DNA of 63,899 nt, filler included, from Octopus bimaculoides (Eukaryota), in NCBI RefSeq assembly GCF_001194135.2. It is 5 parts of 5 records of this genome, joined end to end, with 100 filler letters (N's around TTAATTAATTAA, not from the genome) between each part and the next. Parts side by side here need not be neighbours in the genome. Positions count along the whole stretch, not along the records: positions 16,502 to 37,786 come from NC_068983.1; 4 more parts are not named here. One strand, 5' to 3'. Position numbers and translations under genes: made by a program. Below the pieces are notes generated by a model. That model did no database searches, had not been told where the DNA came from, and was given only the letters and a program-made list of their open reading frames with translations. Shown one piece after another: positions 18,761 through 35,829 of the stretch (its first letter is position 1; each line of letters starts with the position of its first letter).

Positions 18761-19867
18761 TGTGAAAGCACTTTACAGATATGTGCGTATGTGTATGTAT
18801 ATATATATATATATATNNNNNNNNNNNNNNNNNNNNNNNNNNNNNNNNNNNNNNNNNNNNNNNNNNNNNNNNNNNNNNNNNNNNNNNNNNNNNNNNNNNN
18901 NNNNNNNNNNNNNNNNNNNNNNNNNNNNNNNNNNNNNNNNNNNNNNNNNNNNNNNNNNNNNNNNNNNNNNNNNNNNNNNNNNNNNNNNNNNNNNNNNNNN
19001 NNNNNNNNNNNNNNNNNNNNNNNNNNNNNNNNNNNNNNNNNNNNNNNNNNNNNNNNNNNNNNNNNNNNNNNNNNNNNNNNNNNNNNNNNNNNNNNNNNNN
19101 NNNNNNNNNNNNNNNNNNNNNNNNNNNNNNNNNNNNNNNNNNNNNNNNNNNNNNNNNNNNNNNNNNNNNNNNNNNNNNNNNNNNNNNNNNNNNNNNNNNN
19201 NNNNNNNNNNNNNNNNNNNNNNNNNNNNNNNNNNNNNNNNNNNNNNNNNNNNNNNNNNNNNNNNNNNNNNNNNNNNNNNNNNNNNNNNNNNNNNNNNNNN
19301 NNNNNNNNNNNNNNNNNNNNNNNNNNNNNNNNNNNNNNNNNNNNNNNNNAAAATTGACTGCTTGATTGAAACCATATTTTGAACTTATTTTTCCGATTCA
19401 CAAAAGAAACCAAAATAAACTAAAAACCTGAAAAGATCAACAAACAACAAATATAAACATAAACAAGTTATAAAATATTTCCTAAGTGAGTTAGCATTCT
19501 TATATTTTTACCTACATTTCTATTTTGTTTGTGTTATTTCGAACATATGATATTGTAATAATGAACTTCAACGCAATTATCACTTCAAAAAAAAAAAAAA
19601 GACAATACAAAATAAGTTGCATTTATAAGAGCAGCCAAGTCGATAATTATCTACCATTTTCTGTTTCATCTATGAATCATCACAACTCTATCAGTTAATC
19701 TAAATGTCGAGATTACAACTGCTGATTATACACTTATGCCCTATATCAGTGTATATGTCTATCACTGTTATATGTCTATATGTATATCACTATTAGCTTT
19801 GTTTTCTGTTTTGCTTTGATGTCTTTCTCACTTCTCTCCTATACATATACAAACATATAATATATAT

Positions 19868-20561: not shown

Positions 20562-21264
20562 TTATATGAACTGAAAGGTATGTTTCTTGCAATGTTTACA
20601 TCGATAAGCACGCTCTATAACCATGATTAGAAGGGGATGTTTAGAAAAAAGAATAAAAAATAATTCACAATTACAGAGATGACAAAATTCCTTGACTTTA
20701 TCATAAGGGAACGAAATTGAGAAAATCAACCAATCTAAATTAAATTGTTTATTATGGTCTTTTAGATACCAAATTAATTTACTAAGCCCTGTACCGTTAC
20801 GTTTATTACTATCCCTAAATGTAGAGTAATGATTAGAAATTTTTTTAGATAACTGAAAAGAAGAACTACCCATATACAAAAAGACATGAAGTAATTTTAC
20901 ACTTGTATTTTTAATTTTAGAATTACTAGACATAAACTTAATTCTGTTGGAATTGATTTCAGAGACAATAACCTTGTTATTAATATTTCTAGGAGGATGG
21001 TTGGTATTAGCTAAATTAATGTTAGTATTAGTAAATTGATTCTTATTTAGTAGACTAATATTATGTGAGGAGATAATTTGTAAGAGATTCTTTTGTTTTG
21101 GAAAAACCAATCCTAACCGTATGTGAGTTGATAATAGAGTAATGACTAGAATTCTTTGGAAAATTCCTAATAATGGCTTCCCGAAACTGCAAAGGAAGAT
21201 TAGATTTAATTTGCCTCCCATAAGGAATAATCAACCAAATAGTTTTGCTATTATTTGCCTTATT
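20562..21264 (-). mobile_element. Decayed Penelope-like retroelement (Naiad-like), linker plus GIY-YIG C-terminus
   Basis: TIWLIIPYGRQIKSNL..NFPKNSSHYSIINSHTVRIGFS, then a frameshift to LQIISSHN..YMGSSS..KKISNHYSTF..TGLSKLIWYLKD..W.I..FPY..CHLCNCELFFI..RCKH. This fits the IWFNPP / LSK.IW.LKD / C.LC..E / CRH pattern. Truncated by the N-gap at 21265. Confidence 0.85.
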
Positions 21265-22477
21265 NNNNNNNNNNNNNNNNNNNNNNNNNNNNNNNNNNNN
21301 NNNNNNNNNNNNNNNNNNNNNNNNNNNNNNNNNNNNNNNNNNNNNNNNNNNNNNNNNNNNNNNNNNNNNNNNNNNNNNNNNNNNNNNNNNNNNNNNNNNN
21401 NNNNNNNNNNNNNNNNNNNNNNNNNNNNNNNNNNNNNNNNNNNNNNNNNNNNNNNNNNNNNNNNNNNNNNNNNNNNNNNNNNNNNNNNNNNNNNNNNNNN
21501 NNNNNNNNNNNNNNNNNNNNNNNNNNNNNNNNNNNNNNNNNNNNNNNNNNNNNNNNNNNNNNNNNNNNNNNNNNNNNNNNNNNNNNNNNNNNNNNNNNNN
21601 NNNNNNNNNNNNNNNNNNNNNNNNNNNNNNNNNNNNNNNNNNNNNNNNNNNNNNNNNNNNNNNNNNNNNNNNNNNNNNNNNNNNNNNNNNNNNNNNNNNN
21701 NNNNNNNNNNNNNNNNNNNNTATATATATAAATATATATATATATACATTTATATACTTATTACATACAAGTGCGTGTATGTATGTACACAAGTATATAT
21801 TGCATAATCATAGGTGAATATATTTGTCAGGACGAGATAAGTAAGAAATTAATTCTAAATATTTTTTGAGGTATCGAATGTGATGTGCGGTTGCCACATG
21901 AAATACCAAACGCACCTTTCTTAGTTTAAGAAGGTAAGTATAATTTCAGAGTGATCCGCCTGCTACTTCTATTAGATCTGATCCTCACGTGGAATCTCAC
22001 TTGTTGGCCCATGTATATCACCTTAAATACAATGTGTACGACTGCGTTTAATTACTACCTAAATGCCTTCAAATACAAAAGCAAAATAGCTCACTTGGTC
22101 TGACAATCAGGATTTTAATCTCGATTACTATACAACCATCAACCCACGTCAAACTGTGTTTTCTTTCTCTGTCTTTAATTATGCCACACTTATACCTTAT
22201 TTCCCTGGAACTTTCGATAACTCTGTACTCACTCCAAGCCTCAGCAGCTCATATTCCTCCTCACTGCGACTAAATGTGCATAAAACCTGTATTATTATCT
22301 TTCATGAGCTCGAGATGAAATTTTAATTTCTCTTCGGTTCACACAGTTATGTCTTTTCTCACAAGTCTACGAAGGATCGTGCATTTCCATGTAACAATAT
22401 ATGATAAAATACACGTCCTAAACTCGCCTTCCCAGTACTATTAGACACATAACGACTTTCTTGATAGTGAGCTGGCA

Positions 22478-23015: not shown

Positions 23016-23192
23016 AATATTGGTCTTAAATTTTGGCATAAGGTCAGGAACTTCGTTGGAGAGGGTTATTCGATTACATCAGCATCAGCATTTTAGCCTT
23101 AAATAACTACCAGTTGAGCGTCTGGTCGATGCAATCAACTCACACCCTTCCCTGAACTTGCTGGTCCTCTGCCAAAATTTGAAACCAATATT
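23016..23192. mobile_element. Two SINE family B 3' ends fused head-to-head (palindrome)
   Basis: 23-bp inverted repeat AATATTGGTCTTAAATTTTGGCA / TGCCAAAATTTGAAACCAATATT with 2 mismatches; each arm matches the family B tail. Confidence 0.75.
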
Positions 23193-23210
23193 AATATGCT
23201 ATGTTATATA

Positions 23211-23420
23211 AGGCGGTGAGATGGCAGAATCTTTATCGCGACGGACACAATGTTTAGCGGTATTTTTTCCGACTTTATATTCTGAGTTCAAATGCCATTG
23301 AAGTCGACTCTCTTTCACTTTTTAGGTCAATGAAATAAGTACCAGTTGAGGGGGTCGATGTAATCGACCTATTCATTATCCCCAAATCTGCTGGCCTTGT
23401 GCGTAAAAATTTGAAGCCAA
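23211..23420 (+). mobile_element. SINE family B, near full length
   Basis: AAGGCGGTGAGATGGCAGAATC...TTCTGAGTTCAAAT (B box)...AAGTACCAGTTGAG...GGTCGATGTAATCGAC...GCTGGCCTTGTGC..AAAATTTGAAGCCAA. Confidence 0.85.
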
Positions 23421-24192
23421 TTTTGTTATAATTAATATATTACTAAATCCTTTATAGTAAAACTAATGAAGCCATAACAGCACAGTTTTAGTCGTCTTCA
23501 AATACTGGACTTTGAAAGAAAGTATATAATATCTATGAATAATATGATTCAACTAAAAACACATTAGAGATACAATTGTGTCGATGAGAGTGAAGAGGCA
23601 ATTCTTAATGTTCAGTATCTTTTCAAAACATTAATTAATAAAGTAACGGAATAAGTACGATGTATAGAGTGTAAACTAGATTTAAGTGTTTTTTTTTAAT
23701 TAAGAAACATTTTTATTCTTTTAATGAAACGCATTCTGTCAAAATACATTATTAAATAGGTGTTGAGCAACATGCATACTATATGTTAGTAGGATATGGG
23801 AAAATGTACATTTTTTAAAAGCATTTTCAAGAACTTTAGTAGTGCAACAAAGACCACATTGACTTCAAACTAAAGTTTTAGTATATTCATACTTTCCAAA
23901 CCAAATGTTAGCATTACTGCAAACGGAACTGTTACGACTAAATACAGGAACTGTTATGTGGCATCCGGATACCGTGCACCGGTTAACATTAACATCCTTC
24001 ATACAAAAACAACCACAATTAAAACAAATACCTTCGGATAATTTCATGAAAACACCCGCTTTATTCTAAAAGCTTTTAGTCTTGAGATTGAAGTAACCTT
24101 AAAAATATTTGCTTGCTTTCTACCAGAATTAGACGCATACACAGATATATATAAGTCGTGCTGTGTCTATAAGTGTGTATGAGTTGATACGG

Positions 24193-24911: not shown

Positions 24912-25866
24912 NNNNNNNNNNNNNNNNNNNNNNNNNNNNNNNNNNNNNNNNNNNNNNNNNNNNNNNNNNNNNNNNNNNNNNNNNNNNNNNNNNNNNNNNN
25001 NNNNNNNNNNNNNNNNNNNNNNNNNNNNNNNNNNNNNNNNNNNNNNNNNNNNNNNNNNNNNNNNNNNNNNNNNNNNNNNNNNNNNNNNNNNNNNNNNNNN
25101 NNNNNNNNNNNNNNNNNNNNNNNNNNNNNNNNNNNNNNNNNNNNNNNNNNNNNNNNNNNNNNNNNNNNNNNNNNNNNNNNNNNNNNNNNNNNNNNNNNNN
25201 NNNNNNNNNNNNNNNNNNNNNNNNNNNNNNNNNNNNNNNNNNNNNNNNNNNNNNNNNNNNNNNNNNNNNNNNNNNNNNNNNNNNNNNNNNNNNNNNNNNN
25301 NNNNNNNNNNNNNNNNNNNNNNNNNNNNNNNNNNNNNNNNNNNNNNNNNNNNNNNNNNNNNNNNNNNNNNNNNNNNNNNNNNNNNNNNNNNNNNNNNNNN
25401 NNNNNNNNNNNNNNNNNNNNNNNNNNNNNNNNNNNNNNNNNNNNNNNNNNNNNNNNNNNNNNNNNNNNNNNNNNNNNNNNNNNNNNNNNNNNNNNNNNNN
25501 NNNNNNNNNNNNNNNNNNNNNNNNNNNNNNNNNNNNNNNNNNNNNNNNNNNNNNNNNNNNNNNNNNNNNNNNNNNNNNNNNNNNNNNNNNNNNNNNNNNN
25601 NNNNNNNNNNNNNNNNNNNNNNNNNNNNNNNNNNNNNNNNNNNNNNNNNNNNNNNNNNNNNNNNNNNNNNNNNNNNNNNNNNNNNNNNNNNNNNNNNNNN
25701 NNNNNNNNNNNNNNNNNNNNNNNNNNNNNNNNNNNNNNNNNNNNNNNNNNNNNNNNNNNNNNNNNNNNNNNNNNNNNNNNNNNNNNNNNNNNNNNNNNNN
25801 NNNNNNNNNNNNNNNNNNNNNNNNNNNNNNNNNNNNNNNNNNNNNNNNNNNNNNNNNNNNNNNNNN

Positions 25867-26706: not shown

Positions 26707-26998
26707 ATACAGTTCTATATTTAAGAGATGTGGAATTATGTACATTGTTTACATTTGACGGATATTTGTCCTCATCTTGCTTGTTGTTAGCACAACGTTT
26801 CGATTGATACACCCTCCAGCTTTCATCAGGTGTCTTGGAGAAATTTCAAACCTGAGTTCACATTCCTAAGGTATTTTTCCATGTTATTATTATTGTTGTT
26901 TTTGTTGTTGTTATTATTATTCAGGTCACTGCCTGGAATCGAACTCGGAATCTCGGGGTTAGTAGCCCGTGCTCTTAACCACTACGCCATATGCCCGT
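26707..26998 (-). mobile_element. tRNA-headed, hammerhead-carrying SINE-like element (HHR element 1), full copy
   Basis: The minus strand reads GGGCATATGGCGTAGTGGTTAAGAGCACGGGCTACTAACCCCGAGATTCCGAGTTCGATTCCAGGC (A box 26979-26989, B box 26935-26946), then (AAT/AAC)n, then a tail containing an HHR core. The left boundary is approximate. Confidence 0.85.
26789..26834 (-). ncRNA. Minimal type I hammerhead ribozyme motif (degraded stems)
   Basis: GACAC-CUGAUGA-A-AGCUG-GAGGGUGUAU-CAAUC-GAAA-C-G-U-U-GUGCU. The catalytic core is intact; stems I and II carry mismatches. Confidence 0.65.
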
Positions 26999-27017
26999 GT
27001 TCTATTCCAGGCAGTGA

Positions 27018-27074
<57 letters not shown>

Positions 27075-27244
27075 TAACAATGATAATAATAATAACATCA
27101 AAAAATATCTTAGGAATGAGAACTCAGGTTTGAAATTTCCCCAAGACACCTGATGAAGGCTGGAGTGTATATCAACCGAAACGTTGTGTTAACAACAAAT
27201 AAGATGAGTACAAATATCCGTCAAATGTAAATAATGTAAATAAT
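26999..27244 (+). mobile_element. HHR element 1, 5'-truncated inverted copy
   Basis: Begins inside the B box (GTTCTATTCCAGGCAGTGACCTGAAT), has an expanded (AAT)n, and is an inverted homologue of 26735-26945. Confidence 0.9.
27145..27190 (+). ncRNA. Minimal type I hammerhead ribozyme motif
   Basis: Stem I GACAC/GUGUU; core CUGAUGA (27150-27156) plus an extra A; stem II GGCUG/CAACC (one C.A mismatch); GAAA (27178-27181); palindromic stem III ACGU; GUU cleavage triplet. Confidence 0.8.
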
Positions 27245-32574: not shown

Positions 32575-33816
32575 TCAGGTCATCCCATAAGTTCTGTCCG
32601 ATTTTACCTTTTTTAAATTGAATGAAATTTAATAGTATTTTAGAATGTCTAATGGAATTAAAAATTGTTTTTATGCATTTGTATACATTTAAACTAATTA
32701 AATATTATTTTACAGAATAATAGAATTAAAATTTCTTTAATTAAAACCCTTTCTAACATGGAAGTATCCAAAGAGCATTTAAGGCACATAATGCTTTATG
32801 AATACAAAAAAGGAAACTCTACAGCTGAAGCGATTCGAAACATATACTCAGTTTATAGGAAAGAATGCTTGAATGAAAGAACTTGCAGAAGATGGTTTGC
32901 AAAATTCAGAAGGGGAGATTTCAGCCTTCAAGATGAAGATCGAACAGGACGTCTACTTGAGTTTAATGATAAGCTCATTGAGGCATTACTTGAAGAAAAT
33001 CCTGCATTATCAGTTGAAGAATTGGCAATAAAGCTGAGTTCAAACCATACGACTGTTCATCGTCATCTTCAACAACTTAGAAAGGTTCCTAAACTTGGAA
33101 AATGGGTGCCTCATGAATTGTCCGAAAACAACCGCATTTCCCGAGTTGACATCTGCTCTTCTCTCCATTCTCAGGAACTCATTTCACCCTTTTTGAATAG
33201 ACTTGTGACTGGTGACAGTGGGTTGGTAAAAGGGAAAAAGCTCAACCACAACCGAGAAGGGAACTTCATGGAAAAAAGGTTCTTCTCTCTATCTGATGGG
33301 ATTGCAAAGGAGTAATTCACTTTGAATTGTTACCACCTAATGCAAAAATCAATACTCAAGTCTACTGTCAGCAATTAGAGCGTTTGAACCAAGCTTTGAA
33401 GAAAAAAAGACCCGCTTTAGTGAATCGAAAAAAAGTGATGTTTCATCAGGACAATGCGTGACCCCACACTGCAAAGATCTCATCACAGAAGATCGAAGAG
33501 CTTGGTTGAGAAAAAATTCCTCATCCACCTTATTCTCCCGATCTTTCTCCTTCAGACTACCGTTTGTTTCGTAGTTTACAGAATCATTTGGGGGACATAA
33601 CTTTCGCAAACCAGGAGGAGGTCGAAACTGACATTTCAGAGTTCTTCACTTTGAAACCAAAAGAGTTTTACACAGATGGGATTAAAAAGCTTGTAAATAG
33701 ATGGAAGGAAGTCATAGATAATCAAGGAAAGTACTTTGATGATTAAATTTCAATTAAACATTTGATCAGTTATTTTCTTTATTCAAAATTCGGACAGACC
33801 TTATGTGATGACAAAT
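32575..33816 (+). mobile_element. Mariner DNA transposon (DD34D), non-autonomous relic
   Basis: Left TIR TCAGGTCATCCCATAAGTTCTGTCCGATTTT after TA (32573-32574); right TIR AAAATTCGGACAGACCTTATGTGATGAC (33785-33812) with a degraded tip; encloses a transposase. Confidence 0.95.
32758..33746 (+). pseudogene. Mariner transposase pseudogene
   Basis: HTH N-terminus, WVPHEL and LVTGD, then a short deletion/frameshift, then KKVLLSI*WD..HQDNA*PH..G*E..HPPYSPDLSPSDY (exactly 34 residues between the 2nd and 3rd catalytic Asp), ending GKYFDD*. Three premature TGA stops. Confidence 0.95.
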
Positions 33817-35829
33817 CAGAAATATGAGTTATATGCTATTTTTTCAAAGAATTACGTGTAAACAATAACTTTTCCTGGTAGTTAGTTATAACAAATCAAC
33901 ACGAGTAAACGAAAATTGTTATTAAAATACTTTCAAAATATTTCCTGTCATTCTTTAAAACTATTTTTTAATACTTGTATTGTTATATTTCGTCCTCAAC
34001 GGGAGGAGACACGTGGGGTGGAGAGTTGTTGAAGAGGTTACAGGGGCTAAACATCACCGGCAGCCATTGAGATTTTAATTACGAATTATTAAGAACGTGG
34101 CGATTTCTGTGTCATTAATAATTCATAATTAGAAAGTGAAACGTAAGTCAGTTAGTCTGTTTCCATGTTTGGAGAATATAGAAATTTATATTACTTATAC
34201 AGCTTATAGCTGTTAGAAAACACGAAAATTCCAGCTTCATAATCTTCCTTTTACGAAACTTTAATATTAAATTCACCATAAACTTGATTTGTCTGTCTTG
34301 CATTTTGTCTTCGTTAGAATTCATGTTATATACATACATATATATATACATATATATATATATATACATATATAAATATNNNNNNNNNNNNNNNNNNNNN
34401 NNNNNNNNNNNNNNNNNNNNNNNNNNNNNNNNNNNNNNNNNNNNNNNNNNNNNNNNNNNNNNNNNNNNNNNNNNNNNNNNNNNNNNNNNNNNNNNNNNNN
34501 NNNNNNNNNNNNNNNNNNNNNNNNNNNNNNNNNNNNNNNNNNNNNNNNNNNNNNNNNNNNNNNNNNNNNNNNNNNNNNNNNNNNNNNNNNNNNNNNNNNN
34601 NNNNNNNNNNNNNNNNNNNNNNNNNNNNNNNNNNNNNNNNNNNNNNNNNNNNNNNNNNNNNNNNNNNNNNNNNNNNNNNNNNNNNNNNNNNNNNNNNNNN
34701 NNNNNNNNNNNNNNNNNNNNNNNNNNNNNNNNNNNNNNNNNNNNNNNNNNNNNNNNNNNNNNNNNNNNNNNNNNNNNNNNNNNNNNNNNNNNNNNNNNNN
34801 NNNNNNNNNNNNNNNNNNNNNNNNNNNNNNNNNNNNNNNNNNNNNNNNNNNNNNNNNNNNNNNNNNNNNNNNNNNNNNNNNNNNNNNNNNNNNNNNNNNN
34901 NNNNNNNNNNNNNNNNNNNNNNNNNNNNNNNNNNNNNNNNNNNNNNNNNNNNNNNNNNNNNNNNNNNNNNNNNNNNNNNNNNNNNNNNNNNNNNNNNNNN
35001 NNNNNNNNNNNNNNNNNNNNNNNNNNNNNNNNNNNNNNNNNNNNNNNNNNNNNNNNNNNNNNNNNNNNNNNNNNNNNNNNNNNNNNNNNNNNNNNNNNNN
35101 NNNNNNNNNNNNNNNNNNNNNNNNNNNNNNNNNNNNNNNNNNNNNNNNNNNNNNNNNNNNNNNNNNNNNNNNNNNNNNNNNNNNNNNNNNNNNNNNNNNN
35201 NNNNNNNNNNNNNNNNNNNNNNNNNNNNNNNNNNNNNNNNNNNNNNNNNNNNNNNNNNNNNNNNNNNNNNNNNNNNNNNNNNNNNNNNNNNNNNNNNNNN
35301 NNNNNNNNNNNNNNNNNNNNNNNNNNNNNNNNNNNNNNNNNNNNNNNNTATACGCACGTCCCACTTAGTTCATTCAGATTTCGGGACTTGCTGTCAGTCG
35401 TGCGTAAATCCCACATTGCGTATTCATACGTGGTCCTATGCAGAGAGATGTGCGATATAAGTTAATATAAGGAGCACATCAATAATGATAGAAAAAGAAA
35501 ACACGGGCTTGAAAGTGGTACTCCCTTATTTTATCTATTACATATATTTCAGTATTCGTTTTCTTTTTTTTTTTTTTTGTCTTTGCTTATGAAGTGTACC
35601 GATGAGCGACGGATTGCATCTATGGTGTGACAGCATGTGTTCCGGAATACTGAAATGTGTATAACAGATGGAATAAGAGACTACCACATTCAAGCGCATA
35701 CTGTGTTATCTCTCATTTCATATATATATTGTAGGTATATGTTTGTGAGGTTATATATGTGTATGTGTGTGTGTGTATATATATATATACATACATACAG
35801 TCATACATTTGTCTGTGAGATTATGTTTG

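What the first reader, a model, noticed from the sequence alone, without database searches (positions are those of the whole stretch)
26707..26998. tRNA-headed SINE whose tail is a hammerhead ribozyme: candidate Penelope-dependent SINE / Pol III retrozyme
Seen: the minus strand has a tRNA-like head (A box TGGCGTAGTGG, anticodon-like loop CTACTAA, B box GAGTTCGATTCC), an (AAT/AAC)n linker, and a ~150-nt tail with GACAC-CUGAUGA-A-stem II-GAAA-CGU-U. Established: SINEs normally take their 3' end from a partner LINE, and minimal type I hammerheads are a hallmark of Penelope-like element pseudo-LTRs and of retrozymes. Inference: this is a chimeric Pol III-transcribed element with a pLTR-derived, self-cleaving tail, mobilised by PLE reverse transcriptase rather than by a LINE. 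I do not know of it being described for cephalopods, but cannot exclude that it is in repeat libraries under another name.
Basis: partly seen in the sequence, partly recalled or inferred. Interest (0 to 1): 0.9.

Follow-up and report, generated by a model that had tools for sequence, protein, structure and literature searches.

The report
tRNA-headed retroposon with Penelope-type tail
This is a decayed, roughly 510-bp head-to-head pair of copies of a short non-coding mobile element whose front looks like a tRNA gene and whose back carries the hammerhead-ribozyme motif and insertion signature of Penelope-like retrotransposons, which suggests these retrotransposons can move a SINE-like passenger, although only this one locus could be examined.

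Summary
The A and B boxes sit at tRNA positions 8 and 52. A covariance model built only from hammerheads of ORF-bearing Penelope-like elements (PLEs) of two bees and a fish scores the tail motif at 30.7 bits (E about 1e-6).

Region 26735-27244 is an imperfect palindrome. It consists of a full copy on the minus strand (head, AAT linker, tail) joined head-to-head to an inverted copy that is 5'-truncated inside the B box. That inverted copy carries the better-preserved hammerhead (39.8 bits, E about 3e-9).

This is the typical PLE insertion layout. The outer ends lie 59 nt beyond the predicted cleavage site, against 53-56 nt in real PLEs. The full copy starts at tRNA position +1.

The best reading is a PLE-made retrocopy of a composite RNA with a tRNA-like 5' end and a PLE-derived 3' end.

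Four things were not shown:
- that a multi-copy family exists (no second copy in about 59 kb of likely octopod DNA: this piece plus two Octopus loci);
- Pol III transcription;
- self-cleavage;
- the partner PLE.

The retrozyme label is not supported. The closest precedent is the Sm-alpha/Sj-alpha elements of schistosomes. I rate it a new variant of a known kind, of moderate interest.

The parts
26735..26996 (-). Full-length copy of the composite element (head + linker + tail), 262 nt
   Evidence: Arm alignment and motif coordinates. The 5' end coincides with tRNA position +1, 7 nt before A-box T8.
26922..26996 (-). tRNA-like head, 73 nt in tRNA numbering plus TG. A box 26989-26979 (positions 8-19), anticodon-like loop 26965-26959, B box 26946-26935 (position 52 onwards).
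   Evidence: A+B consensus: 1 match, 0 of 100 shuffles. ARAGORN and Rfam tRNA are negative, so the stems are degenerate.
26884..26921 (-). (AAT/AAC)n linker of the full copy
   Evidence: It is present in both arms and shares the ...AATAATAATAACAT junction with the tail.
26735..26883 (-). Tail of the full copy, 149 nt, ending in AATGTAAAC-AATGTACAT-AAT
   Evidence: It aligns without gaps to the other arm with 15 mismatches.
26789..26834 (-). H17 is at 26794, so cleavage is predicted between 26794 and 26793.
   Evidence: CM R1 30.7 bits, E 1.2e-6. It fails the strict descriptor because of A10.1 x C11.1.
26995..27244 (+). Inverted, 5'-truncated copy. It starts in the T arm/B box (CCGTGTTCTATTCC...) and is joined to the full copy through a 2-nt overlap at 26995-26996.
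   Evidence: (I1, I2).
27022..27095 (+). (AAT)~25 linker of the inverted copy, expanded relative to the other arm
   Evidence: TRF: period 3, 24.7 copies.
27096..27244 (+). Tail of the inverted copy, 149 nt
27145..27190 (+). Better-preserved PLE-type minimal hammerhead: GACAC-CUGAUGA-A-GGCUGG..UCAACC-GAAA-CG-U-U-GUGUU. H17 is at 27185.
   Evidence: Passes the descriptor. CM R1 39.8 bits, E 2.6e-9. Its MFE topology is the same as that of the bee PLE hammerhead.

Best explanation
The locus is an old, dead insertion made by the reverse transcriptase-endonuclease of a Penelope-like element (PLE) acting in trans on a short non-coding composite RNA.

That RNA began at position +1 of a tRNA-derived, Pol III-type promoter module (A box at +8, B box at +52). 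It continued through an (AAU)n stretch. It ended in a ~150-nt module derived from a PLE pLTR/ORF-start region, which carries the PLE minimal type I hammerhead and, about 59 nt further on, the site where PLE reverse transcription starts.

As with PLEs, both strands of an AT-rich target were cut and both 3'-OH ends primed cDNA synthesis. One cDNA reached the 5' end of the RNA. The other stopped in the T arm. The two were joined through a 2-nt overlap. The result is a head-to-head palindrome with the element's 3' ends facing outward.

Shown here:
- the motifs;
- the palindrome;
- the class-level identity of the hammerhead;
- the geometric match to real PLE insertions.

Inferred:
- Pol III transcription of a master copy;
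- recognition of the tail by a PLE protein;
- the origin of the composite, for example a 5'-truncated PLE copy landing in the (TAA)n tail of a simple tRNA-SINE.

In this setting the hammerhead is more likely a passenger within the RT-recognition module than a working processing site. A single copy cannot dimerise in cis, and cleavage would detach the head from the 3' end.
For: 1. A CM built only from hammerheads in pLTRs of ORF-bearing PLEs (Anthophora, Megachile, Trachinotus) hits both arms over the full model at 39.8 and 30.7 bits. The background maximum is 13.9 bits in the piece, 13.1 bits in 106 kb of control loci and 14.1 bits elsewhere in the training loci.

2. [quoted passage not shown] It even shares a CxA mismatch at the third helix II pair with the Anthophora PLE.

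3. The layout matches published PLE insertion structure: a full copy plus an adjacent inverted 5'-truncated copy, and both target strands cut and extended in vitro. I saw the same layout in L007, L009 and L010.

4. The distance from H17 to the outer end of the inverted repeat is 59 nt in both arms here, and 55, 56 and 53 nt in the three PLE loci. This fits internal RT initiation downstream of the hammerhead cut site.

5. The full copy begins at 26996, which is tRNA position +1 relative to the A box. Both arms share identical head/linker and linker/tail junctions. A single composite template therefore existed before this insertion.

6. The sense strand has no TTTT over 260 nt, while AAAA runs are present. 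Only 7.6% of 260-nt windows in the piece lack TTTT.

7. Octopus genomes hold many active Penelope families and about 900 mostly unclassified SINE families.
Against: - Only one locus was seen. There is no second copy of head or tail in the 18 kb of this piece, in 41 kb of O. vulgaris and O. bimaculoides DNA, or in metagenome, viral and prokaryote collections.
- No target-site duplication was found.
- No cephalopod PLE sequence was available, so tail-to-pLTR homology is untested. Similarity to PLEs is at class level only.
- The head does not fold as a tRNA, so promoter activity is only inferred.
- The MFE fold of a 61-nt stretch around each motif is not a hammerhead and is no more stable than shuffles.
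- The 3' end carries a 9-nt tandem duplication of a kind also seen at LINE/SINE 3' ends.
- The window's species is only inferred, from a mariner copy and a SINE shared with Octopus.
Confidence: 0.6

Rival explanations
1. One-off chimera rather than a family. A PLE reverse transcriptase copying the 3' end of PLE RNA switched template onto the (AAU)n-tailed RNA of an ordinary LINE-dependent tRNA-SINE. This is analogous to U6/L1 chimeric retrocopies. The result was inserted here once, and no master gene or family exists.
For: No other copy was found. The order is what template switching predicts: complete small-RNA-like 5' part, A-rich repeat, then a 5'-truncated PLE part. Dong-R4 LINEs, whose clade is associated with (TAA)n repeats (my recollection, not checked here), are the most active LINEs in O. 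vulgaris.
Against: Both arms carry the same linker/tail junction (...AATAATAATAACAT|) and the same head/linker junction. Two cDNAs primed from opposite strands must each have copied a sense template, so the chimeric RNA existed before this event. Two identical independent switches are unlikely.
Confidence: 0.17
2. Chance neighbours plus a DNA-level rearrangement. A simple tRNA-SINE ending in (AAT)n happened to lie next to a solo PLE 3' fragment. A later inverted duplication by replication template switching created the palindrome.
For: PLEs prefer AT-rich and microsatellite targets, with ATT cleavage. A PLE fragment abutting an (AAT)n tract is therefore expected by itself. No TSD was found.
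Against: This reading needs two coincidences. The duplication junction falls exactly at tRNA position +1, and both outer ends fall 59 nt after the hammerhead site, where genuine PLE copies end (53-56 nt). The arms are short (about 250 bp) and bounded on both sides by unrelated unique sequence.
Confidence: 0.12
3. The tail is the 3' end of a LINE (CR1, L2 or RTE type) and the hammerhead-like string is fortuitous. The element would then be an ordinary LINE-dependent tRNA-SINE.
For: The 3' end has a short tandem repeat (AATGTAAAY x2) and a small hairpin (GUUGU/ACAAC) upstream of it, as in stringent LINE/SINE tails. The MFE fold of the 61-nt stretch is not a hammerhead. Rfam hammerhead models do not hit.
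Against: The CM from independent PLE hammerheads gives E about 3e-9 in 42.6 kb of searched sequence (21.3 kb, both strands), which would still be below 1e-3 when scaled to a 2.7-Gb genome. The descriptor's chance rate is 0.003 per piece. An inverted 5'-truncated duplicate sharing the whole 3' region is a PLE signature, not a LINE signature.
Confidence: 0.06
4. A foldback or MITE-type DNA transposon with about 250-bp terminal inverted repeats that happens to enclose a tRNA-like fragment.
For: A 510-bp palindrome with strong hairpin potential (central 108 nt: -59.8 kcal/mol, z = -9.4).
Against: There is no TSD of any usual length at the ends and no known TIR terminus. The asymmetry at the centre is exactly the 5' 48 nt of a tRNA-like unit. 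The arms contain a strand-specific PLE ribozyme motif that reads outward on both sides.
Confidence: 0.03

Closest known systems
Sm-alpha / Sj-alpha SINE-like retroposons of Schistosoma (Ferbeyre 1998; Laha 2000; summarised in PMC6765202 and PMC2770079)
   Same: Short, non-coding elements with a tRNA-derived head carrying Pol III boxes, followed by a type I hammerhead in the body.
   Different: Sm-alpha carries a canonical, efficiently cleaving hammerhead with a real helix III and loop-loop contacts. It is often tandem and is present in more than 10,000 copies. Here the motif is the minimal PLE variant with no helix III. The arrangement is an inverted pair, not a tandem, and the copy number is unknown. 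No sequence homology was tested.
Pseudo-LTR / ORF-start region of Penelope-like elements and their insertion structure (Cervera & de la Pena 2014; Craig et al. 2021; Frangieh et al. 2024; loci L007, L009, L010)
   Same: Same hammerhead architecture: CUGAUGA-A-G...C-GAAA-CG-U-H. Same head-to-head inverted 5'-truncated copy. Same distance from the cleavage site to the copy's 3' end.
   Different: There is no RT/EN ORF and no direct pLTR. The 5' part is replaced by a tRNA-like module and an (AAT)n stretch. The 30-40-nt one-sided 'tail' extension could not be recognised.
Metazoan non-LTR retrozymes (Cervera & de la Pena 2020; Li, Clavereau & Pollet preprint 2026)
   Same: Small non-autonomous elements carrying type I hammerheads, argued to derive from PLE pLTRs and to depend on PLEs.
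   Different: Retrozymes are tandem direct repeats with a hammerhead in each unit, and they are expressed as circular RNA. None has a tRNA-like Pol III head. This locus has no tandem repeat.
LINE-dependent tRNA-SINEs of octopus (OR1/OR2/OK; tRNA-Core, tRNA-Deu families)
   Same: tRNA-derived head with A and B boxes, a few hundred bp long, in an octopod-like genome rich in SINEs.
   Different: Their tails come from LINEs. The abundant octopus SINE present in this same piece (about 23101-23442) is unrelated in sequence to this head or tail.
U6/L1-type chimeric retrocopies made by RT template switching
   Same: A small-RNA-like 5' part fused in the same orientation to a 5'-truncated retrotransposon 3' part.
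   Different: Those chimeras are one-off products flanked by TSDs. Here the same junctions occur in two independently primed cDNAs, which points to a pre-existing composite template.

Membership tests
PLE-type minimal type I hammerhead (min-HHR) | Conserved core C3U4G5A6N7G8A9 ... G12A13A14 A15.1 ... U16.1 H17 | tested here: met
   CUGAUGA ... GAAA-CG-U-U is intact in both arms.
PLE-type minimal type I hammerhead (min-HHR) | Unpaired nucleotide between A9 and 10.1, plus a G10.1-C11.1 closing pair | tested here: met
   The extra A is present in both arms. G10.1-C11.1 is present in the + arm (27145-27190) and mutated to AxC in the - arm. The feature list comes from PMC4209133.
PLE-type minimal type I hammerhead (min-HHR) | No helix III loop. 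Positions 15.2-16.2 are palindromic, so two motifs can pair. | tested here: met
   A-CG-U forms the palindrome ACGU, identical to the bee and fish PLE motifs.
PLE-type minimal type I hammerhead (min-HHR) | Helix I of 4-5 bp and an extended helix II (6-8 bp) | tested here: inconclusive
   In the + arm, helix I is 5 bp (including one G.U). Helix II has 5 pairs plus one CxA mismatch, at the same position as in Anthophora. In the - arm, helix I is 3 bp and helix II is disrupted.
PLE-type minimal type I hammerhead (min-HHR) | Significant score against a model of bona fide PLE hammerheads | tested here: met
   CM R1, built without the window sequence, gives 39.8 bits (E 2.6e-9) and 30.7 bits (E 1.2e-6). 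Background is at most 14.1 bits. E-values are rough.
PLE-type minimal type I hammerhead (min-HHR) | Self-cleavage, as a dimer or assisted by protein | not testable with these tools
   This needs in vitro transcription of monomer and dimer constructs, with and without PLE protein.
PLE-mediated insertion | Inverted 5'-truncated copy directly adjacent to the 5' end of the main copy | tested here: met
   The feature is described in PMC8557442 and was reproduced in L007, L009 and L010.
PLE-mediated insertion | The 3' terminus lies at the internal RT start site, a fixed short distance downstream of the hammerhead cut site | tested here: met
   59 nt in both arms, against 55, 56 and 53 nt in three PLE loci. 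The mechanism is described in PMC11167929.
PLE-mediated insertion | Partial tandem (pLTR) and/or a one-sided 30-40-bp tail extension | tested here: not met
   No direct repeat of the unit was found. A one-sided extension cannot be recognised without a consensus.
PLE-mediated insertion | Sequence homology of the tail to the pLTR/ORF start of an autonomous PLE in the same genome | not testable with these tools
   No cephalopod PLE could be retrieved. The best 120 hits to the PLE probe contained none, and there is no PLE fragment in the piece or in L001/L002.
tRNA-derived SINE | Internal Pol III promoter: A box and B box at tRNA positions | tested here: met
   TRGCNNAGTGG at +8 and (G)GTTCGANNCC at +52. 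One match, 0 of 100 shuffles.
tRNA-derived SINE | Recognisable tRNA cloverleaf or tRNA homology | tested here: not met
   ARAGORN finds nothing at default or ps90. At ps80 it makes only an odd 94-nt call that uses the palindrome as the acceptor stem. There is no Rfam tRNA hit at E<=10. This is common for old SINE heads.
tRNA-derived SINE | Dispersed multi-copy family | tested here: inconclusive
   No further copy was found in about 59 kb of likely octopod DNA (this piece plus two Octopus loci) or in any collection. A whole-genome search was not possible.
tRNA-derived SINE | Target-site duplication | tested here: not met
   The flanks share only a 7-mer, 19 and 27 nt from the ends, which is at chance level.
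Non-LTR retrozyme | Tandem direct repeats, each with a type I hammerhead, giving circular RNA | tested here: not met
   There are two motifs only, on opposite strands and diverging. There is no tandem array.
MITE / foldback DNA transposon | Terminal inverted repeats flanked by a TSD | tested here: not met
   Inverted repeats are present, but there is no TSD.

The most novel reading that the evidence does not exclude
Octopods harbour a true SINE family, possibly several among the roughly 900 'unclassified' SINE families. It would be transcribed by Pol III from a tRNA-derived head and would have taken its 3' recognition module from a Penelope-like element rather than from a LINE. That would be the first documented SINE-PLE partnership. 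Its insertions would carry the PLE double-priming signature, so many copies would be palindromes able to give hairpin RNAs.
Probability: 0.35. Interest if true: 0.75.

Novelty: new variant of a known kind. Interest (0 to 1): 0.55.

Why it matters
SINEs are defined by their dependence on LINEs. PLEs are a separate retrotransposon class whose non-autonomous dependants have only recently been discussed, as retrozymes.

A Pol III-headed passenger of PLEs would extend the SINE concept to a third RT class. It would give a compact natural substrate (about 150 nt) for mapping what a PLE protein recognises. It could also account for part of the large unclassified SINE fraction of octopus genomes.

The PLE habit of priming from both strands would make such elements a built-in source of long hairpins. 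That matters in animals with heavy A-to-I editing and small-RNA pathways.

If this is only a one-off chimera, it still documents trans-mobilisation of a foreign RNA by a PLE.

Tried and rejected
Searches for more copies:
- Self-BLAST of the piece found only the inverted arm.
- Peptides from all open frames of the tail, concatenated and searched against 5.8 billion proteins, gave no hit. The aim was to catch spurious ORFs called on other copies.
- The antisense ORF spanning tail, linker and head was searched against 1.84 billion representatives and gave none.
- Exact-product look-ups of three window ORFs found nothing on record.
- Pattern scans of metagenome, prokaryote-genome and viral collections gave nothing. 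The only hits were two 25-27-nt matches in bacterial MAGs with unrelated flanks and no hammerhead, which I treat as chance.
- Searching the sequence strings in the paper library gave nothing.

Sampling of Octopus DNA:
- Mariner homologues gave L001 (O. vulgaris) and L002 (O. bimaculoides). Neither holds a copy of the head, the tail or a PLE.
- L003 and L004 turned out to come from an unknown, non-octopus organism.

PLE probe:
- I wrote a PLE RT-EN consensus from memory, as a probe only. It retrieved 4,919 real PLE proteins, but no cephalopod was among the 120 listed. The partner-PLE test therefore failed.
- Amphioxus L006 and ENA L008 PLE loci gave no hammerhead with my descriptor.
- MAFFT misaligned the hemichordate U3-A8 variant, so it was left out of the model.

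Readings rejected:
- Assembly artefact. The arms differ by 10% and in microsatellite length.
- L1-style twin priming. That gives an inversion, not a duplication of the 3' region.
- The Rfam miRNA-like hits (MIR2606, mir-643). They score far below gathering thresholds and only reflect the hairpin.

Full report
**What is in the sequence**

Read on the minus strand, 26996-26735 contains the following:
- a 73-nt tRNA-sized module, GGGCATA-TG-GCGT-AGTGGTTAA-GAGC-...-CCGAG-TTCGATT-CCAGG-CAGTGAC-C;
- an (AAT/AAC)n stretch at 26921-26884;
- a 149-nt tail at 26883-26735.

The A box TGGCGTAGTGG starts at tRNA position 8 (26989). The B box starts at position 52 (26945). The consensus pair at this spacing occurs once in the window and in none of 100 shuffles.

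The stems are degenerate. ARAGORN finds no tRNA and makes only an odd call at relaxed thresholds. Rfam reports neither tRNA nor any hammerhead family, even at E<=10.

The tail holds GACAC-CUGAUGA-A-AGCUGG...UCAAUC-GAAA-CG-U-U-GUGCU at 26834-26789.

Region 26735-27244 is an imperfect palindrome (I1 and I2). The plus strand from 26995 reads CCGTGTTCTATTCC-AGGCAGTGACCTG-(AAT)~25-tail. This is an inverted second copy that begins inside the T arm/B box and runs to the same last base (...ATAAT) as the first copy.

The two tails align without gaps over 149 nt, with 15 mismatches (10 transitions; JC 0.108). Both the head/linker junction and the linker/tail junction are the same in both arms.

The asymmetric centre is the 5' 46-48 nt of the tRNA-like module. 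The junction is a 2-nt overlap at 26995-26996, which is exactly tRNA positions 1-2.

Beyond both outer ends the flanks are unrelated, and no target-site duplication is visible. The arms differ too much, in substitutions and in microsatellite length, for this to be an assembly artefact.

**Is the hammerhead real?**

[quoted passage not shown] - a G10.1-C11.1 pair;
- a long helix II;
- a 4-5-bp helix I;
- no helix III loop, with palindromic 15.2-16.2 so that two motifs pair.

Such motifs are also sometimes found 100-700 bp apart on opposite strands (PMC4209133).

The plus-arm copy (27145-27190) has all of these features and passes a descriptor written from them. The descriptor's chance rate is about 0.003 per piece.

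For an independent test I needed real PLE hammerheads. A PLE RT-EN consensus that I wrote from memory, used as a probe only, retrieved thousands of genuine PLE proteins carrying precomputed Pfam hits such as PF00078 (RVT_1) and, for a few, PF01541. I fetched six of their loci. The descriptor found hammerheads in four of them:
- hemichordate L005, in a 118-bp direct pLTR, with the U3-A8 covariant core;
- bee L007;
- fish L009;
- bee L010.

The bee and fish motifs read CUGAUGA-A-G...C-GAAA-CG-U-U/C, the same frame as here. The Anthophora motif even has CxA at the third helix II pair, as does the window's plus arm (Megachile has U.G there).

A covariance model built only from the two bee motifs and the fish motif gave these scores:
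- window plus arm: 39.8 bits, E 2.6e-9;
- window minus arm: 30.7 bits, E 1.2e-6;
- next best hit in the piece: 13.9 bits;
- best hit in 106 kb of other loci, including two Octopus loci: 13.1 bits;
- training sequences: 59-65 bits, and a non-training copy in L009: 52 bits.

The E-values are rough, but the gap is large.

RNAfold does not predict a hammerhead for a 61-nt stretch. With shorter flanks, the plus arm gives the same MFE topology as the bee motif. Thermodynamic folding is a weak test for this class.

**Is the layout PLE-like?**

PLE insertions often have an inverted 5'-truncated copy directly at the 5' end, and they prefer microsatellite targets (PMC8557442). A purified PLE protein cuts at ATT, extends both DNA strands, and starts reverse transcription internally, downstream of the hammerhead cut site, at two sites 30-40 nt apart. 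Hammerhead cleavage is not needed for insertion (PMC11167929).

Priming from both strands puts the 3' ends outward and the 5' ends together, which is the arrangement seen here. My control loci show the same arrangement:
- L007 has a 398-bp palindrome with hammerheads diverging from the centre.
- L009 has an inverted 3' fragment upstream of the ORF.
- L010 has two full elements head-to-head inside a satellite.

The distance from H17 to the outer end of the inverted repeat is 55, 56 and 53 nt in those loci, and 59 nt in both arms of the window.

**Do head and tail belong together?**

Three observations say yes for this event.
1. Both arms contain the 3' part of the head, the linker and the tail, with identical junctions. 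Two cDNAs primed from opposite strands must each copy a sense template, so a composite RNA existed beforehand.
2. The full copy begins at tRNA position +1, where a Pol III SINE transcript would start.
3. The sense strand has no T4 terminator over 260 nt, which is true of only 7.6% of such windows in the piece. This is weak support.

A DNA-level inverted duplication of two chance neighbours would have to hit both of these landmarks by accident.

**What could not be shown**

I found no second copy in any of these searches:
- the piece itself;
- protein-frame searches;
- exact look-ups;
- metagenome, viral and prokaryote scans;
- the paper library;
- 41 kb of O. vulgaris and O. bimaculoides DNA.

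The host is probably an octopod. The piece shares a mariner (86% identity to O. vulgaris) and an abundant octopus SINE with those loci.

Octopus genomes hold about 900 mostly unclassified SINE families and about 30 active Penelope families (PMC13282606). A low-copy family would therefore easily escape my sample. No cephalopod PLE was retrievable, so homology of the tail to a partner pLTR is untested. Transcription and cleavage are also untested.

If the arms were identical at insertion, JC 0.108 between them suggests an age of roughly 15 My on the calibration quoted. This is a rough inference.

**Comparison with what is known**

The nearest precedent is Sm-alpha/Sj-alpha of schistosomes: tRNA-derived, Pol III-type, SINE-like elements with a hammerhead. 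Those carry a canonical, active ribozyme and are often tandem.

Animal retrozymes have recently been argued to be non-autonomous PLE derivatives (preprint). They are tandem arrays without a Pol III head, so this locus fails that membership test.

I found no paper describing a tRNA-headed element with a PLE tail. This is an absence in the library searched, not proof that none exists.

**Verdict**

This is a PLE-made retrocopy of a composite RNA with a tRNA-like 5' end and a PLE-derived 3' end. It is a new variant of a known kind. Whether it belongs to a real SINE family is open.

Noticed in passing
window 32758-33315 (+): A 185-aa ORF that is the N-terminal half of a Mos1/mariner transposase (HTH_48, E 1.9e-21). 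The DNA is 86% identical to a copy in O. vulgaris and 83% identical to contigs of an unknown ENA assembly. The closest proteins are Limulus 'SETMAR-like' (72-74%). The distribution is patchy across phyla.
   Followed up: partly
window about 23101-23442: Copy or copies of an abundant octopus tRNA-derived SINE, 70-78% identical to several copies in L001 and L002. It is unrelated to the head studied here. A better-preserved copy with A and B boxes lies at about L002 11249 (-).
   Followed up: partly
window 20562-21221 (-): A 219-aa ORF with a Cys-rich C-terminal part. It has no Pfam hit and is not on record as a called gene. It may be a remnant of an unclassified mobile element.
   Followed up: partly
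L007 2998-3004 and L010 4729-4735: In the two bee PLEs the start codon of the RT ORF lies inside the CUGAUGA box of the hammerhead. In the window the same ATG opens a 25-codon frame that ends at a TAA 14 nt before the element's 3' end (both arms).
   Followed up: partly
L010 1-950 and 4848-7587: Two full-length PLE ORFs lie head-to-head (100% identical arms) inside an array of roughly 83-bp satellite repeats. A 30-nt extra 'tail' is present on one side only. This is a textbook example of the published PLE insertion signature.
   Followed up: partly
L005 6767-7070: A 300-bp self-complementary palindrome (81%) just downstream of the second pLTR hammerhead of a hemichordate PLE.
   Followed up: no
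L011 1932-1958 and L012 2397-2421: The tail segment GAGAACTCAGGTTTGAAATTTCCCCA has exact 27-nt and 25-nt matches in two bacterial MAG contigs: Gimesia, inside a 1632-aa ORF, and Thiomargarita, in non-coding sequence. The flanks are unrelated and there is no hammerhead. The matches are longer than expected for a 20-mer seed, but I treat them as coincidence.
   Followed up: partly
window 18817-19349, 21265-21720, 24912-25866, 34380-35348: The four large N gaps (456-969 nt) of the piece are bordered by di- or tetranucleotide microsatellites ((TA)n, (TG)n, (CT)n, (ACAT)n). The assembly appears to have broken at simple repeats. The nearest gap is about 870 bp from the element.
   Followed up: no
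window 26918-27025 (-): The centre of the palindrome would fold as a near-perfect 108-nt RNA hairpin (-59.8 kcal/mol, z = -9.4). It gives sub-threshold Rfam matches to miRNA precursor families. If transcribed, it could be a substrate for Dicer or ADAR.
   Followed up: partly
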